From positions 37,026-101,025 of the forward strand of contig NIVC01003376.1 of assembly GCA_002269645.1 (NCBI GenBank): a stretch of DNA of 64,000 nt. Direction: 5' to 3'. This document shows, piece after piece, positions 16,014 through 25,243 of this stretch (its first letter is position 1; each line of letters begins with the position of its first letter). A model generated the notes under the pieces. It did not search any database. It was not told the DNA's origin and saw nothing but the letters and a program-made list of their open reading frames with translations. Source of the stretch: Macrostomum lignano (lineage: Eukaryota). Position numbers and translations under genes: made by a program.

Positions 16014-19000
16014 ATGCTGCACGGTTCTATGCTCAGACGAAAGCGCAGCATGCTGCACACCTATGCGCTGCTAATCTGGCTAGTTGCTATAGAAACCATT
16101 CGCATCGCTGTCAGAGTGGCTGGTCACGTTTGTCGCTGGCCAGTGCAGCTGTTAAATTGGCTGGTTACTCTGCAATTTCTTGCTCCGCTGGTTCAGTCTG
16201 TAGCGAAACTGTTTCACAATACTCAGAGATCTCGAAGGGCTATCGTTGTGTTCACTCGACTGCCATATCCGGGTCGAACTAAATCACGTCTAATACCCTA
16301 TATAGGGCCGAGCAACTCCGCCTTGGTGATGCGAGTGCTAACAGAGAGTCTAATACGCAGATTGCAGCCATTGCGTCATCGTTTGCCTGACACTGATATC
16401 TACATAGCCTATAAAGACCAGTGCCATGTGGTCTGCGAAGCCACCGTGTGTAACCGCCCGGTACAGTTATGGATGGAATGCATCGATAGGCACGTAGAAT
16501 TTTCCCAATCTAAATCGTCTTCTGTTAATTCGAATAGCAACGGTAGAGATAGAAATGGTCGCTTATCAACTAATAATGGCCGAATTGGAGAAGGCCAGGT
16601 GGACGATGTTTCGTCCGAGGATGGGTTGCACTTTAACGATGCTCCTGAGCCGGAGATCTGGAATGGTGCGGACGGAATGGACGATACAGAAGATGATAGC
16701 TTCTGCGTTGAAAATGCTATGGAATTTGGCGCTTTTGAGCGCTATTTGGAGCAGCTTAAATCTAGAGATTCGCCTCCGTACCAATCTGCTAAGCATGGTT
16801 AGTGAGATGCGTTTATTGCTGACTTAGTTTGGCTTCTATTCGACTCTTCTCGAATCCTCCTAAAGCTTTACCTAATTGAGGAGCACTTTTAATGTCTTGC
16901 TTACTTGACCAAATGTCGCGTAGTGTACATCGTGCTTCCTGAAGGTTGTTGCATTGCATCTGATGATGTTGTTAAAGGTTAAAGCTGATGATGTACTTCC
17001 TGAAGGTTGTTAAAGCTGATGATGTACTTCCTGAAGTTTTTAAATCTGATGGTCTACTTCCTGAAAGTTGTTATAAATCTGATGATGTACTTCCTGAAGT
17101 TTTTTTATATCTGATGATGTACTTCCTGAAGGTTGTTAAAGCTGATGGTGAACTTCCTGAAGGTTGTTAAATCTGATGATGTACTACTTGAAGTTGTTAA
17201 ATCTGATGGTAAACTTCCTGGAGGTTGTTAAATTTGATGATTTACTTCCTGAAGGTTGTTTTATCTGATGATGTACTTCTTGAAGGTTGTTATATCTGAT
17301 GTACTACTTCCTGGATGTTGTTAAATCTGATAATGTACTTCCTGAAAGTTGTTATAAATCTGATGATATACTTCCTGAAGGTTATTAAATCTGAGGATCT
17401 ACTTCCTGAAGGTTGTTAAATCTGATGATGTACTTCCTGAAGGTTGTTAAATCCGATGATGTACTTCCTGAAGGTTATTAAATCTGATGATGTACTTCCT
17501 GAAGGTTATTAAATCTGATGATCTACTTCCTGAAGGTTGGTAAATCTGATGATGTACTTCCTGAAGGTTATTAAATCTGATGATGTACTTCCTGAAGGTT
17601 ATTAAATCTGATGATCTACTTCCTGAAGGTTGTTAAATCTGATGATGTACTTCCTGAAGGTTGTTAAATCCGATGATGTACTTGCTGAAGGTTATTAAAT
17701 CTGATGATGTACTTCCTGAAGGTTATTAAATCTGATGATCTACTTCCTGAAGGTTGTTAAATCTGATGATGTACTTCCTGAAGGTTGTTAAATCCGATGA
17801 TGTACTTCCTGAAGGTTATTAAATCTGATGATGTACTTCCTGAAGGTTATTAAATCTGATGATCTACTTCCTGAAGGTTGTTAAATCTGATAATGTACTT
17901 CCTGAAGGTTGTTAAATCCGATGATGTACTTCCTGAAGGTTGTTAAATCCGATGATGTACTTCCTGAAGGTTATTAAATCTGATGATGTACTTCCTGAAG
18001 GTTATTAAATCTGATGATATACTTCCTGAAGGTTATTAAATCTGATGATCTACTTCCTGAAGGTTGTTAAATCTGATGATGTACTTCCTGAAGGTTGTTA
18101 AATCCGATGATCTACTTCCTGAAGGTTGTTAAATCCGATGATGTACTTCCTGAAGGTTATTAAATCTGATGATCTACTTCCTGAAGGTTGTTAAATCTGA
18201 TGATTTACTTCCTGAAGGTTGTTAAATCCGATGATGTACTTCCTGAAGGTTGTTAAATCCGATGATGTACTTCCTGAAGGTTATTAAATCTGATGATGTA
18301 CTTCCTGAAGGTTGTTGAATCTGATGATCTACTTCCTGAAGGTTGTTAAATCCGATGATGTACTTCCTGAAGGTTGTTAAATCCGATGATGTACTTCCTG
18401 AAGGTTGTTAAATCCGATGATGTACTTCCTGAAGGTTGTTAAATCCGATGATGTACTTCCTGAAGGTTATTAAATCTGATGATGTACTTCCTGAAGGTTA
18501 TTAAATCTGATGATCTACTTCCTGAAGGTTGTTAAATCTGATAATGTACTTCCTGAAGGTTGTTAAATCCGATGATGTACTTCCTGAAGGTTGTTAAATC
18601 CGATGATGTACTTGCTGAAGGTTATTAAATCTGATGATGTACTTCCTGAAGGTTATTAAATCTGATGATCTACTTCCTGAAGGTTGTTAAATCTGATGAT
18701 GTACTTCCTGAAGGTTGTTAAATCCGATGATGTACTTCCTGAAGGTTATTAAATCTGATGATGTACTTCCTGTAGGTTATTAAATCTGATGATCTACTTC
18801 CTGAAGGTTGTTAAATCTGATAATGTACTTCCTGAAGGTTGTTAAATCCGATGATGTACTTCCTGAAGGTTGTTAAATCCGATGATGTACTTCCTGAAGG
18901 TTATTAAATCTGATGATGTACTTCCTGAAGGTTATTAAATCTGATGATATACTTCCTGAAGGTTATTAAATCTGATGATCTACTTCCTGAAGGTTGTTAA

Positions 19001-25000: not shown

Positions 25001-25243
25001 GGCGGCTACCGTGACTGGCCCTTTCTCGAGGACATCGAATTCGCCGAACGGGTGAAACAATTCGGTCACGTGGCCATCGCGGATGCCGCCGTGATGACGT
25101 CGCCGAGGCGCTGGATCACCCACGGATTCCTGGCCGTGTGCGGACTCAATGCACTCATTCTATTGGCCTATCGAATGGGCGTTGAGCCTGCTAAACTGGG
25201 CGCAATATACTACTCAGTTGGCAAGAGCTGGGTTCGAGTGTAG
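16014..25243 (+). CDS. Six-exon gene (about 714 aa): hydrophobic N-terminus + DUF2064/TIGR04282 (CofC-like) domain + GT2/TIGR04283 domain, bacterial rSAM/arsenosugar-associated transferase fusion. Exons 16014-16797, 19479-19693, 20428-20640, 23058-23330, 24229-24609, 24965-25243
   Basis: GT-AG junctions keep the frame (2145 nt). Motifs IVVFTRLPYPGRTKSRLIP, PQSGCTIG, VLLSSDVPAL, LVLGKTGSGGLYL, ILWGSSTV, LRDLDTIDDL (DUF2064); VLIPARNEAD, IVIVDGRSVDGT, GRGQMI, LVLHADSSLP, AGAF, PIGSQGLF, GGYRDWPFLEDIEF, TSPRRW (TIGR04283-like). Exon 4 acceptor could lie further upstream. Confidence 0.85.
16940..19400. repeat. 31-bp minisatellite (CTGATGATGTACTTCCTGAAGGTTGTTAAAT)n in intron 1 of the transferase gene
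   Basis: Tandem array with a 930-bp higher-order duplication. Confidence 0.97.
19870..20290. repeat. About 36-bp minisatellite (CTTAGACTTGATTCTCATCATTAGAATCTCTCCCC)n in intron 2
   Basis: Tandem array. Confidence 0.9.
20900..21435. repeat. (CT)n microsatellite and CT-rich tract in intron 3
   Basis: Direct; explains the SLSLSL/ERERER ORFs. Confidence 0.95.
22088..22975 (+). repeat. 31-bp minisatellite family P (GCTGGGCCACCAGCCTCCCAGATCCTCAGTT)n in intron 3
   Basis: Tandem array; same family at four other loci. Confidence 0.95.
23415..24150. repeat. 21-bp minisatellite (GGGTCATCATCATAGTCTAGT)n in intron 4
   Basis: Tandem array; explains the DYDDDPL/GHHHSLV ORFs. Confidence 0.95.
24655..24903 (-). 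repeat. Minisatellite family P, reverse orientation, in intron 5
   Basis: Reverse complement of the 22088 unit. Confidence 0.9.

What the first reader, a model, noticed from the sequence alone, without database searches (positions are those of the whole stretch)
16014..25243. Intron-containing animal gene fusing two bacterial arsenosugar/rSAM-associated transferases (DUF2064 + GT2)
Seen: six GT-AG exons splice into one open frame of about 714 aa with a TIGR04282/DUF2064 (CofC-like) domain followed by a TIGR04283-like GT2 domain. Known: in bacteria these two families sit beside, or are fused near, the radical-SAM enzyme ArsS and the methyltransferase ArsM, and they are annotated as arsenosugar-biosynthesis glycosyltransferases. 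Inference: a marine invertebrate may encode part of its own arsenosugar or other unusual glycoside pathway, through horizontal acquisition or patchy retention, rather than only taking arsenosugars from its diet. No ArsS or ArsM is present in this window.
Basis: partly seen in the sequence, partly recalled or inferred. Interest (0 to 1): 0.85.

Follow-up and report, generated by a model that had tools for sequence, protein, structure and literature searches.

The report
Flatworm copy of conserved marine-animal transferase
The six-exon gene is real, but it is not a flatworm-specific bacterial import: it is a fast-evolving copy of an uncharacterised two-domain transferase gene that marine animals from sponges to amphioxus share, and its proposed role in arsenic-sugar synthesis remains untested.

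Summary
Observation confirmed. Six GT-AG exons (16014-25243, + strand) splice into a 2145-nt frame. The 714-aa product is 100% identical to GenBank "hypothetical protein BOX15_Mlig000337g1" of the flatworm Macrostomum lignano. It has a DUF2064/TIGR04282 domain followed by a GT2/TIGR04283 domain.

Interpretation only partly supported.
- The animal did not make the fusion. The same domain order is common in bacteria (49 of 81 loci sampled).
- The best relatives are not bacterial. They are about 500-aa proteins from more than 20 marine animals (sponge, molluscs, annelid, nemertean, brachiopod, priapulid, echinoderms, hemichordates, amphioxus) and a few protists.
- Sponge, scallop and amphioxus share at least six intron positions with phases. 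The gene is therefore old in animals and patchily retained, which removes the recent-HGT reading.
- The flatworm copy is divergent. It sits on a long branch, carries a 178-aa disordered insert, scores below both NCBIfam cut-offs, has four universally conserved residues replaced, and shares no ancestral intron exactly.
- The arsenic link rests on bacterial gene context alone: ArsS lies within 10 kb in 11 of 44 complete loci. No ArsS is in the window or in four other animal loci. Flatworms are reported to lack AS3MT.

Most likely function: a membrane-anchored enzyme with two GT-A-fold domains, nucleotide-dependent, substrate unknown.

The parts
16014..16797 (+). Exon 1 (aa 1-261, ends in phase 1). 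Holds the start codon, an N-terminal hydrophobic helical hairpin (aa 4-68), the first part of the DUF2064 domain with the PGxxK[ST]RL motif (aa 75-134), and the start of the lineage-specific insert.
16798..19478 (+). Intron 1 (2681 nt, GT-AG). Almost filled by a 31-bp x 78 minisatellite at 16978-19395.
19479..19693 (+). Exon 2 (aa 262-333). Holds the end of the disordered insert (through aa 312, nt 19630) and the resumption of the DUF2064 domain (Q310, G316).
16416..19630 (+). Coding span of the flatworm-specific insert (aa 135-312, interrupted by intron 1). It is Ser/Asn/Gly/Asp-rich, pLDDT is below 50, and the aligned amphioxus, scallop and sponge proteins have only about 30 residues at this site.
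19694..20427 (+). Intron 2 (734 nt), with a 36-bp minisatellite. Its first 12 nt read V-I-L-L in frame, mimicking the start of exon 3. The conserved animal intron lies 3 codons downstream.
20428..20640 (+). Exon 3 (aa 334-404). DUF2064 core: SSDVP (D340 kept, G338S) and SGGLY in place of the invariant DGGYY (D369S, Y372L).
20641..23057 (+). Intron 3 (2417 nt), with a (CT)n tract at 20896-21442 and a 31-bp x 28 minisatellite at 22095-22974.
23058..23330 (+). Exon 4 (aa 405-495). Holds the end of DUF2064 (D424-x-D426), the linker, and the start of the GT2 domain (P455, N458-E459, D486-G-R-S489-x-D491).
23331..24228 (+). Intron 4 (898 nt), with a 21-bp x 38 minisatellite.
24229..24609 (+). Exon 5 (aa 496-622). 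GT2 core: H552-A-D554 (the DXD-equivalent), G577-A-F579, the extra residues between the GAF motif and R611 that animals have and bacteria lack (29 residues against 18), and IGSQ in place of the invariant YGDQ (D621S).
24610..24964 (+). Intron 5 (355 nt), with a 28-bp minisatellite that is the reverse complement of the intron 3 unit.
24965..25243 (+). Exon 6 (aa 623-714 plus TAG). GT2 C-terminal part: E644-D645, T667-S-x-R670-R671-W672, and the terminal amphipathic helices.

Best explanation
This is the Macrostomum lignano copy of an old, intron-bearing gene found across marine animals. It encodes a membrane-tethered enzyme with two GT-A-fold domains.

Origin: the family is of bacterial type. 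The DUF2064 (TIGR04282) and GT2 (TIGR04283) domains are already fused in that order in many bacteria. It entered eukaryotes long before flatworms arose, and was later lost from many lineages. I infer this from its absence among the named top hits, not from a search of those lineages.

The flatworm copy has evolved fast. It gained a 178-aa disordered loop inside domain 1, remodelled its introns and replaced four otherwise invariant residues. It keeps an intact frame and most catalytic-looking residues, so it is most likely still an enzyme, possibly with altered substrate binding.

Proposed mechanism (inferred, not shown):
- N-terminal hydrophobic helices hold the protein on a membrane. In other animals a single hydrophobic segment is followed by a K/R cluster, which by the positive-inside rule puts the catalytic domains in the cytosol.
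- Domain 1 is a CofC/MobA-like nucleotide-binding fold. It keeps K90, R92, D340, D424 and D426. It binds a nucleotide or nucleoside-bearing substrate with a divalent metal, and activates or presents it.
- Domain 2 is an inverting-type GT2. It keeps D486/D491, H552-x-D554 and E644-D645. It transfers the glycosyl (possibly ribosyl) moiety to an acceptor at the membrane surface.

The substrate is unknown. The only pointer is that bacterial homologues often sit in operons with ArsS, which makes 5'-deoxy-5'-dimethylarsinoyl-adenosine.
For: Gene and identity.

A true animal locus:
- It has introns and lies between a C2-domain gene and a DIX-domain gene.
- A second collinear copy in the assembly has an identical CDS and about 99.5% identical introns.

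Closest relatives are animals:
- The top 14 of 8828 hits include 12 named marine animals (187-275 bits) and two unnamed metagenome proteins. One of those two scores as bacterial-type and the other as animal-like.
- Named further down the list are a sponge, sea stars and more molluscs, plus the protists Vitrella, Ploeotia and Diplonema.

Ancient origin: at least six intron positions with phases are shared by amphioxus, scallop and sponge.

Placing the flatworm protein with animals:
- 365.8 bits against an animal-only HMM versus 306.6 against a bacterial HMM.
- Between the GAF motif and R611, the flatworm has 29 residues and eukaryotes a median of 29, against exactly 18 in all 29 bacteria.
- An N-terminal hydrophobic extension is present in most animals and absent from bacteria.
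- The NJ tree puts it on a long branch at the base of the eukaryote clade. It falls in a purely eukaryotic clade in 117-127 of 200 bootstraps.

Fold:
- AlphaFold gives two confident domains (pLDDT 83-95 over most of 313-445 and 449-708) and a disordered 135-312.
- Foldseek and phmmer match GT-A GT2 enzymes and the DUF2064 structure 3cgx.

Residue retention: 56 of 67 near-invariant columns are kept.

Bacterial context: ArsS in 11, a second radical SAM gene in 10 and a DedA/VTT gene in 20 of the 44 loci with at least 5 kb on both sides. ArsS chemistry is from PMC13598754.
Against: - None of the five flatworm introns coincides exactly with an ancestral position. One is 3 codons away in the same phase.
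- NJ bootstrap support for placement among eukaryotes is only moderate, and exact clade composition is unstable (23 of 200). No maximum-likelihood tree could be made.
- The protein is below both NCBIfam cut-offs (147 against 182; 91 against 134).
- It has lost G338, D369, Y372 and D621, which are 100% conserved in 46 other sequences. One or both domains could therefore be inactive.
- The two genomic copies are too similar to measure selection.
- Cytosolic orientation, residue roles and the two-step mechanism are inferences from motifs and from my recollection of CofC/FbiD and GT2 enzymology. None of them was tested.
Confidence: 0.7

Rival explanations
1. Endogenous arsenosugar pathway. The protein acts downstream of an ArsS-type radical SAM enzyme and an arsenite methyltransferase. 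It converts 5'-deoxy-5'-dimethylarsinoyl-adenosine into dimethylarsinoyl-ribosides, so marine animals would make their own arsenosugars.
For: - In bacteria, genuine ArsS (383.6 bits) lies within 10 kb in 11 of 44 complete loci. It is usually on the same strand and often abutting.
- NCBI names both families 'arsenosugar biosynthesis glycosyltransferase'.
- Amphioxus, scallop and sea-urchin orthologues pass both family cut-offs.
- All named animal carriers are marine.
- Several carriers or their close relatives (amphioxus, acorn worm, oyster, Lingula, a sea urchin, a sponge) are also reported to have AS3MT (PMC5398495).
Against: - The family names rest on gene context. I found no paper testing these transferases, and no paper in the library mentions DUF2064.
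- Three quarters of complete bacterial loci have no ArsS nearby. DedA/VTT is the commoner neighbour.
- No ArsS lies in the window or in about 190 kb around four other animal copies.
- Flatworms were reported to lack AS3MT.
- The flatworm protein fails both cut-offs and has lost invariant residues.
- Vertebrates have AS3MT, but no vertebrate appears among the named hits. Only about 30 of the top 150 representatives could be named.
Confidence: 0.12
2. Membrane glycolipid or polyprenyl-phosphate-linked glycan synthesis unrelated to arsenic. The enzyme glycosylates a lipid or lipid-linked acceptor at a membrane.
For: - The commonest bacterial neighbour is a DedA/VTT-family membrane protein (20 of 44 loci). 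Its only NCBIfam match is a weak one to the undecaprenyl-phosphate transporter UptA (27 bits).
- Several long bacterial fusions add an AglJ or dolichyl-phosphate-hexose-transferase-like GT2 in front of the pair.
- Animal proteins carry an N-terminal membrane anchor.
- The nearest solved GT2 by sequence is the archaeal membrane mannosyltransferase PcManGT (6yv7).
Against: - The DedA match is far below its cut-off.
- Context evidence is no stronger than for ArsS, and some loci have both.
- No acceptor can be named.
- Nothing was tested in animals.
Confidence: 0.2
3. The flatworm copy is a catalytically impaired or repurposed derivative (a pseudoenzyme or an enzyme with changed specificity) of the animal enzyme.
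For: - G338S, D369S, Y372L and D621S replace residues that are 100% conserved in 46 other sequences.
- It has the longest branch in the tree.
- A 178-aa disordered insert splits domain 1.
- Its scores fall below the family cut-offs, whereas other animals pass or sit at the border.
Against: - 56 of 67 near-invariant positions are kept, including the nucleotide- and metal-binding-type Asp residues of both domains.
- The frame is intact over six exons in two genomic copies.
- The deposited annotation is transcript-derived.
- Both folds are predicted with high confidence.
Confidence: 0.25
4. Recent horizontal transfer from a bacterium into the flatworm lineage, followed by intron gain.
For: - The family is overwhelmingly bacterial (8828 hits).
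- No flatworm intron matches an ancestral animal position exactly.
- In 73-83 of 200 NJ bootstraps the flatworm protein is not in a purely eukaryotic clade.
Against: - The best hits are animals by about 90 bits over typical bacterial fusions.
- The animal HMM beats the bacterial HMM by 59 bits.
- The flatworm protein shares the extra residues between GAF and R611 and the N-terminal anchor with other animals.
- One intron is only 3 codons from an ancestral one, in the same phase.
Confidence: 0.04
5. Bacterial contamination or an assembly artefact.
For: None beyond the bacterial flavour of the domains.
Against: - Five spliceosomal GT-AG introns packed with minisatellites typical of this genome.
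- Flanking C2-domain and DIX-domain animal genes on a 101-kb contig.
- A second collinear copy on another contig.
Confidence: 0.01

Closest known systems
Animal DUF2064-GT2 proteins annotated only as 'uncharacterized protein', e.g. Branchiostoma floridae XP_035676070.1, Magallana gigas XP_019918188.3, Mizuhopecten yessoensis OWF56872.1 and Sycon ciliatum XP_065183132.1
   Same: - Same two domains in the same order.
- An N-terminal hydrophobic anchor.
- The same number of residues (29, against 18 in bacteria) between the GAF motif and R611 in the GT2 domain.
- 30-38% identity over both domains, and these are the best hits in a 1.84-billion-protein search.
   Different: - The flatworm protein is about 200 aa longer because of a disordered insert in domain 1.
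- It has two N-terminal helices instead of one.
- It has lost four invariant residues.
- It has five introns, none at the conserved animal positions, against 9-10 in amphioxus and scallop.
Bacterial fused TIGR04282-TIGR04283 proteins (about 430-460 aa) from Verrucomicrobiota, Planctomycetota, Desulfobacterota, Cyanobacteria and others
   Same: Same domain order and the same motif set: PGxxKTRL, GxD, DxD, DGGSxD, HxD, ED and SxRRW.
   Different: - They have no N-terminal anchor and no extra residues in the GT2 domain.
- They score 200-255 bits on both NCBIfam models, against 91 and 147 here.
- They often sit in operons with ArsS, a second radical SAM gene or a DedA gene.
PDB 3cgx, a putative nucleotide-diphospho-sugar transferase (DUF2064) from Desulfovibrio desulfuricans G20, a crystal structure with no function assigned in the entry name
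   Same: It is the only solved member of the domain 1 family. phmmer gives E 1.9e-22 to the amphioxus orthologue, and Foldseek matches the flatworm model.
   Different: It is a single domain of unknown function and does not carry the flatworm's 178-aa insert.
CofC/FbiD (2-phospho-L-lactate or PEP guanylyltransferase) and MobA-like NTP transferases
   Same: Weak profile matches of domain 1 (TIGR03552, E 0.0027 here; PF01983 and PF12804 in relatives). They suggest a nucleotide-binding fold with an Asp triad.
   Different: The matches are far below the cut-offs. The assignment of residue roles comes from my memory of FbiD structures and was not tested.
Tandem GT-A enzymes such as E. coli K4 chondroitin polymerase (2z86/2z87)
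   Same: Two GT-A-type domains in one chain. Foldseek aligns more than 400 columns across both domains.
   Different: Only 12% identity, TM-score below 0.3 and rmsd of 16-17 Å. This is an architectural analogy only.

Membership tests
Pfam PF09837 (DUF2064) | Score at or above the gathering threshold (25.8 bits) | tested here: met
   41.9 bits, E 1e-10, residues 307-397.
Pfam PF00535 (Glycos_transf_2) | Score at or above the gathering threshold (23.3 bits) | tested here: met
   44.7 bits, E 1.8e-11, residues 451-581.
NCBIfam TIGR04283 (equivalog, 'arsenosugar biosynthesis glycosyltransferase') | Whole-protein score at or above the curated cut-off (182 bits) | tested here: not met
   147.4 bits, although the match covers model positions 2-221 of 221. 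Amphioxus (221.5), scallop (185.7) and sea urchin (191.3) pass. Sponge and priapulid (177) fall just short.
NCBIfam TIGR04282 (hypothetical equivalog, 'arsenosugar biosynthesis glycosyltransferase') | Whole-protein score at or above the curated cut-off (134 bits) | tested here: not met
   91.1 bits in two stretches split by the insert. The other animals tested score 134.5-174.
TIGR04282/TIGR04283 pair | Conservation of the family's invariant residues | tested here: inconclusive
   56 of 67 columns that are at least 93% conserved are kept. G338, D369, Y372 and D621, each 100% conserved in 46 sequences, are replaced.
Arsenosugar biosynthesis system (ArsM + ArsS + associated transferases) | An ArsS (TIGR04167) gene next to the transferase gene or genes | tested here: not met
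   No significant tblastn hit with 17 bacterial ArsS proteins in the 64-kb window (best E 0.1). No hit at E <= 0.01 in loci L002 and L004-L006.
Arsenosugar biosynthesis system (ArsM + ArsS + associated transferases) | ArsS and an arsenite methyltransferase elsewhere in the same genome | not testable with these tools
   No eukaryotic genome collection was available. The one remaining protein search was saturated by 8000 bacterial ArsS hits. The literature reports no AS3MT in flatworms (PMC5398495).
Arsenosugar biosynthesis system (ArsM + ArsS + associated transferases) | Production of dimethylarsinoyl-ribosides that depends on the gene | not testable with these tools
   This is an experimental question. 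No paper in the library tests these transferases.
Metazoan DUF2064-GT2 orthologue group | Closest relatives are the animal proteins, and the animal profile scores better than the bacterial profile | tested here: met
   12 of the top 14 hits are named animals. The animal HMM gives 365.8 bits and the bacterial HMM 306.6.
Metazoan DUF2064-GT2 orthologue group | Animal-type sequence features: extra residues in the GT2 domain and an N-terminal hydrophobic anchor | tested here: met
   29 residues between the GAF motif and R611, as in animals and against 18 in bacteria. Hydrophobic N-terminal helices are present.
Metazoan DUF2064-GT2 orthologue group | Shared ancestral intron positions and phases | tested here: not met
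   0 of 5 positions are identical. One is 3 codons away in the same phase. Amphioxus, scallop and sponge share at least six.
Metazoan DUF2064-GT2 orthologue group | Phylogenetic placement within the animal/eukaryote clade | tested here: inconclusive
   The NJ tree places it at the base of the clade on a long branch. It falls in a purely eukaryotic clade in 117-127 of 200 bootstraps. No maximum-likelihood analysis was possible.

The most novel reading that the evidence does not exclude
Marine animals from sponges to amphioxus, and in diverged form this flatworm, keep an ancient enzyme that processes 5'-deoxyadenosyl-type metabolites. Together with AS3MT and an as yet unlocated ArsS-like radical SAM enzyme, it would let them make arsenosugars or related arsenicals themselves, rather than obtaining all of them from algae.
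Probability: 0.1. Interest if true: 0.85.

Novelty: new member of a known kind. Interest (0 to 1): 0.45.

Why it matters
For the flatworm gene itself the result is deflationary. It is already in GenBank as a hypothetical protein, it is not a recent bacterial import, and the fusion is not an animal innovation.

The family-level picture deserves a note. A two-domain enzyme of a family otherwise almost wholly bacterial is conserved, with ancient introns and an added membrane anchor, in at least 20 marine invertebrates of eight phyla. No vertebrate, insect or nematode appears among the hits that could be named. It is annotated only as "uncharacterized", and no paper in the searched library mentions DUF2064.

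The sole functional lead is the bacterial link to ArsS. That bears on an old question, namely where the organic arsenic of marine animals comes from. The lead can be tested cheaply with a phylogenetic profile of ArsS across the carrier genomes, and then with enzyme assays. M. lignano has RNAi and transgenesis, but it may be a poor representative because its copy is so diverged.

Tried and rejected
- Word-index protein searches. The full protein and the GT2 domain found only the self-hit and a handful of proteins about 30% identical, and missed all animal orthologues. The exhaustive phmmer search was needed.
- ArsS in animals. The last homologous-protein search, with a four-sequence ArsS alignment, returned 8000 of 8000 bacterial-type hits. 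Only the top 120 were listed, so it says nothing about animals.
- Biopython NJ on 150 taxa timed out and was replaced by a numpy NJ. Exact-clade bootstrap values were low because unnamed sequences move about, so I used looser clade criteria.
- Literature. Searches for DUF2064, TIGR04282/3, DUF3641, Mlig000337 and ArsS with ArsM gave nothing on these transferases or on this gene. M. lignano HGT papers were irrelevant.
- Selection test between the two genomic copies: 0 differences in 2145 nt, so there was no power.
- Long bacterial and protist fusions were checked for a 'Rosetta stone' fusion to ArsS. None was found. They add a second GT2 or an FAD oxidoreductase instead.
- Other recurrent bacterial neighbours, judged by reading the sequences, looked like ABC transporters, kinases, a helicase and so on. 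They recur in few loci, and no ArsM-like cluster stood out.
- Pfam scans of ten long window ORFs found only a reverse-transcriptase fragment and repeat-derived noise.
- An alternative splice that would restore the ancestral intron 2 position was examined by eye. It has no usable in-frame acceptor.

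
Full report
**1. The observation**

Reading 15500-25800 and joining the six proposed exons gives an open frame of 2145 nt, which is 714 codons plus TAG. The exons are 16014-16797, 19479-19693, 20428-20640, 23058-23330, 24229-24609 and 24965-25243. Every junction is GT...AG.

Pfam finds DUF2064 (PF09837, 41.9 bits) and GT2 (PF00535, 44.7 bits), both above their thresholds. NCBIfam finds TIGR04283 (E 4.4e-43) and TIGR04282 (E 7.5e-26) as by far the best matches.

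The translation is 100% identical over its full length to GenBank [quoted passage not shown]. The window is part of contig NIVC01003376.1 of assembly GCA_002269645.1. That annotation came from RNA-seq-guided transcript assembly and TransDecoder (PMC5730564), so the splice model has indirect transcript support.

tblastn with the amphioxus and scallop proteins independently lights up exons 1, 3, 4, 5 and 6, in order, on the + strand. A bacterial protein lights up exons 1, 4, 5 and 6.

**2. It is a real animal locus**

- The five introns (355-2681 nt) are packed with minisatellites, as expected for a genome that is 15% simple and tandem repeats.
- The neighbours are a C2-domain gene and a DIX-domain gene.
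- A second collinear copy on NIVC01003939.1 encodes the identical protein. It has 0 differences in 2145 coding nt and about 99.5% identity in the introns, consistent with the known redundancy of this assembly.
- Contamination is excluded.

**3. Relatives**

An exhaustive phmmer search of 1.84 billion representatives gave 8828 hits.

The top group scores 187-275 bits, shows 30-38% identity, is about 490-590 aa long and matches both domains. Where named, these are animals:
- Branchiostoma, Owenia, Priapulus, Mizuhopecten, Magallana, Mytilus, Lytechinus, Solemya, Lingula and Ptychodera.
- Tubulanus, Haliotis, Asterias, the sponge Sycon, Mya, Patella, Mactra, Acanthaster, Saccoglossus and Pinctada.
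- Close by are the protists Vitrella, Ploeotia and Diplonema.

All the named animals are marine.

Typical bacterial fused proteins (430-460 aa) follow from about 185 bits downward. The same DUF2064-then-GT2 order is present in 49 of 81 bacterial loci fetched from the species-level genome collection. The other 32 loci have a stand-alone GT2. The fusion is therefore not an animal invention.

**4. Age of the gene in animals**

I mapped exon structures by exact spliced alignment and placed the introns on a protein alignment. Amphioxus has 9 introns, scallop 10, and the sponge at least 6.

Five positions are identical in alignment column and phase in all three. A sixth is shared by amphioxus and sponge, with the scallop intron one base away. 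Amphioxus and scallop share two more, and a further pair lies five alignment columns apart in the same phase. A gene with this structure was present in the last common ancestor of these lineages.

"Patchy retention" is what remains.

**5. Where the flatworm copy sits**

For an animal origin:
- The top hits are animals.
- An HMM built only from 15 other animals scores the flatworm protein at 365.8 bits, against 306.6 for an HMM of 94 bacterial fusions.
- It has the same 29 residues between the GAF motif and R611 as the animal median, where all 29 bacteria have exactly 18.
- It has an N-terminal hydrophobic extension that bacteria lack.

Less clear:
- In an NJ tree it sits on the longest branch, at the base of the eukaryote clade. 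It falls in a purely eukaryotic clade in 117-127 of 200 bootstraps.
- None of its five introns is at an ancestral position. Intron 2 lies 3 codons upstream of a conserved phase-0 intron. Its first 12 nt (V-I-L-L in frame) echo the first four codons of exon 3 (V-V-L-L), which may be a trace of intron sliding.

I read this as a fast-evolving orthologue with remodelled introns, not a separate acquisition. A proper maximum-likelihood tree is still needed.

**6. How diverged is it?**

- Other animals reach or approach the NCBIfam cut-offs: amphioxus 221/174, sea urchin 191/160, scallop 186/155, and sponge and priapulid 177/135-151. The flatworm scores 147/91, against cut-offs of 182/134.
- Of 67 columns that are at least 93% conserved across 46 animal, protist and bacterial sequences, it keeps 56.
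- It replaces four that are 100% conserved: G338S, D369S and Y372L (DGGYY becomes SGGLY) and D621S (YGDQ becomes IGSQ).
- A 178-residue Ser/Asn/Gly/Asp-rich segment (135-312) is inserted in domain 1 and is predicted disordered.
- It retains K90/R92 in the PGxxK[ST]RL loop, D340 and D424-x-D426 in domain 1. In domain 2 it retains D486/S489/D491, H552-x-D554, E644-D645 and R670-R671-W672.
- AlphaFold predicts both domains confidently.
- The nearest structures are generic GT-A GT2 enzymes and the DUF2064 structure 3cgx, whose function is unknown.

**7. Function**

Shown here:
- Two GT-A or nucleotide-binding-type domains in tandem.
- A hydrophobic N-terminus. In most animals this is one hydrophobic segment followed directly by a K/R cluster.

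Inferred:
- A cytosol-facing, membrane-tethered enzyme.
- Domain 1 binds or activates a nucleotide-bearing substrate, and domain 2 transfers a glycosyl or ribosyl group.

The arsenic hypothesis rests on bacterial context. I verified that context. Among 44 bacterial loci with at least 5 kb on both sides, true ArsS (TIGR04167, 383.6 bits) is present in 11, usually on the same strand and abutting. A second radical SAM paralogue is present in 10, and a DedA/VTT membrane protein in 20. ArsS adenosylates dimethylarsenite to DDMAA (PMC13598754).

Against applying this to the flatworm:
- The transferases themselves have not been tested in any paper I could find.
- Most bacterial loci lack ArsS.
- Long bacterial fusions add a dolichyl- or polyprenyl-phosphate-type GT2, or a SelD-associated-type oxidoreductase, rather than ArsS.
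- No ArsS lies in the window or around four other animal copies.
- Palmgren et al. found AS3MT in amphioxus, acorn worm, oyster, Lingula, a sea urchin and a sponge, which are carriers of the fusion or their close relatives, but not in flatworms.

The overlap with AS3MT is suggestive at family level. However, it is also the ordinary pattern for ancestral genes lost in fast-evolving lineages.

I could not determine whether animals have ArsS.

**8. Verdict**

The gene and its domains are real and already deposited. The recent-HGT and "animal fusion" readings are refuted. The arsenosugar reading is an untested lead, and it is weaker for this flatworm than for other carriers.

The noteworthy residue is at family level: an uncharacterised, anciently intron-bearing, membrane-anchored enzyme of bacterial type that is conserved across marine invertebrates.

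Noticed in passing
window 16978-19395, 19930-20281, 20896-21442, 22095-22974, 23408-24180, 24650-24905: Every intron of the gene carries a minisatellite or microsatellite: 31 bp x 78, 36 bp x 10, (CT)n of about 550 bp, 31 bp x 28, 21 bp x 38 and 28 bp x 9. The whole window holds more than 30 such arrays.
   Followed up: partly
window 22095-22974 (+), 24650-24905 (-), 25941-26330 (+), 47376-48078 (+), 51648-52057 (+): One 27-31-bp unit (core CCTCCCAGATCCTSAGTTGCTGGG) occurs in five separate arrays, one of them inverted. There are 75 matches against 0 expected. It looks like a dispersed minisatellite family, perhaps carried by a mobile element.
   Followed up: partly
window 19694-19705 and 20428-20439: The first 12 nt of intron 2 (GTCATTCTGCTG, V-I-L-L in frame) mimic the first 12 nt of exon 3 (GTGGTCCTACTG, V-V-L-L). 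The intron conserved in amphioxus and sponge lies exactly 3 codons downstream, with the scallop intron one base further. This may be a footprint of intron sliding.
   Followed up: partly
L002 (NIVC01003939.1), whole locus: A second collinear copy of the gene and its flanks. The coding sequence is identical (0 differences in 2145 nt) and the introns are about 99.5% identical. This fits the known duplicated state of the DV1 line assembly.
   Followed up: yes
window 61865-62608 (+): An ORF with a reverse-transcriptase domain (PF00078, E 1.7e-7), probably a retroelement fragment.
   Followed up: no
bacterial loci L015, L024, L029, L033, L034, L042, L056, L078: A second radical SAM gene accompanies ArsS in 8 of the 12 loci that have it. 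It has a C-terminal Cys-rich tail like that of ArsS, and its best NCBIfam match is Rv1681-family at 99.6 bits, far below the cut-off. Its role is unknown.
   Followed up: partly
bacterial loci L003 and L007-L086 (20 of the 44 complete loci): A DedA/VTT-family membrane protein is the most frequent neighbour of the bacterial DUF2064/GT2 genes, more frequent than ArsS.
   Followed up: partly
proteins P0042, P0075, P0086, P0093, P0149, P0116: Longer fusions, presumably bacterial (their sources were not looked up), put an AglJ or dolichyl-phosphate-hexose-transferase-like GT2 in front of the DUF2064-GT2 pair. P0116 instead has an FAD oxidoreductase of the type found N-terminal to SelD.
   Followed up: partly
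proteins P0011-P0033 and relatives, N-termini: Most animal orthologues begin with a 2-20-residue tail, one hydrophobic segment and then a K/R cluster, for example MVSVVISVILTTVVVTLAIFIGRLRKRRR. This implies an N-out, C-in anchor with cytosolic catalytic domains, the opposite of classical type II Golgi glycosyltransferases.
   Followed up: partly
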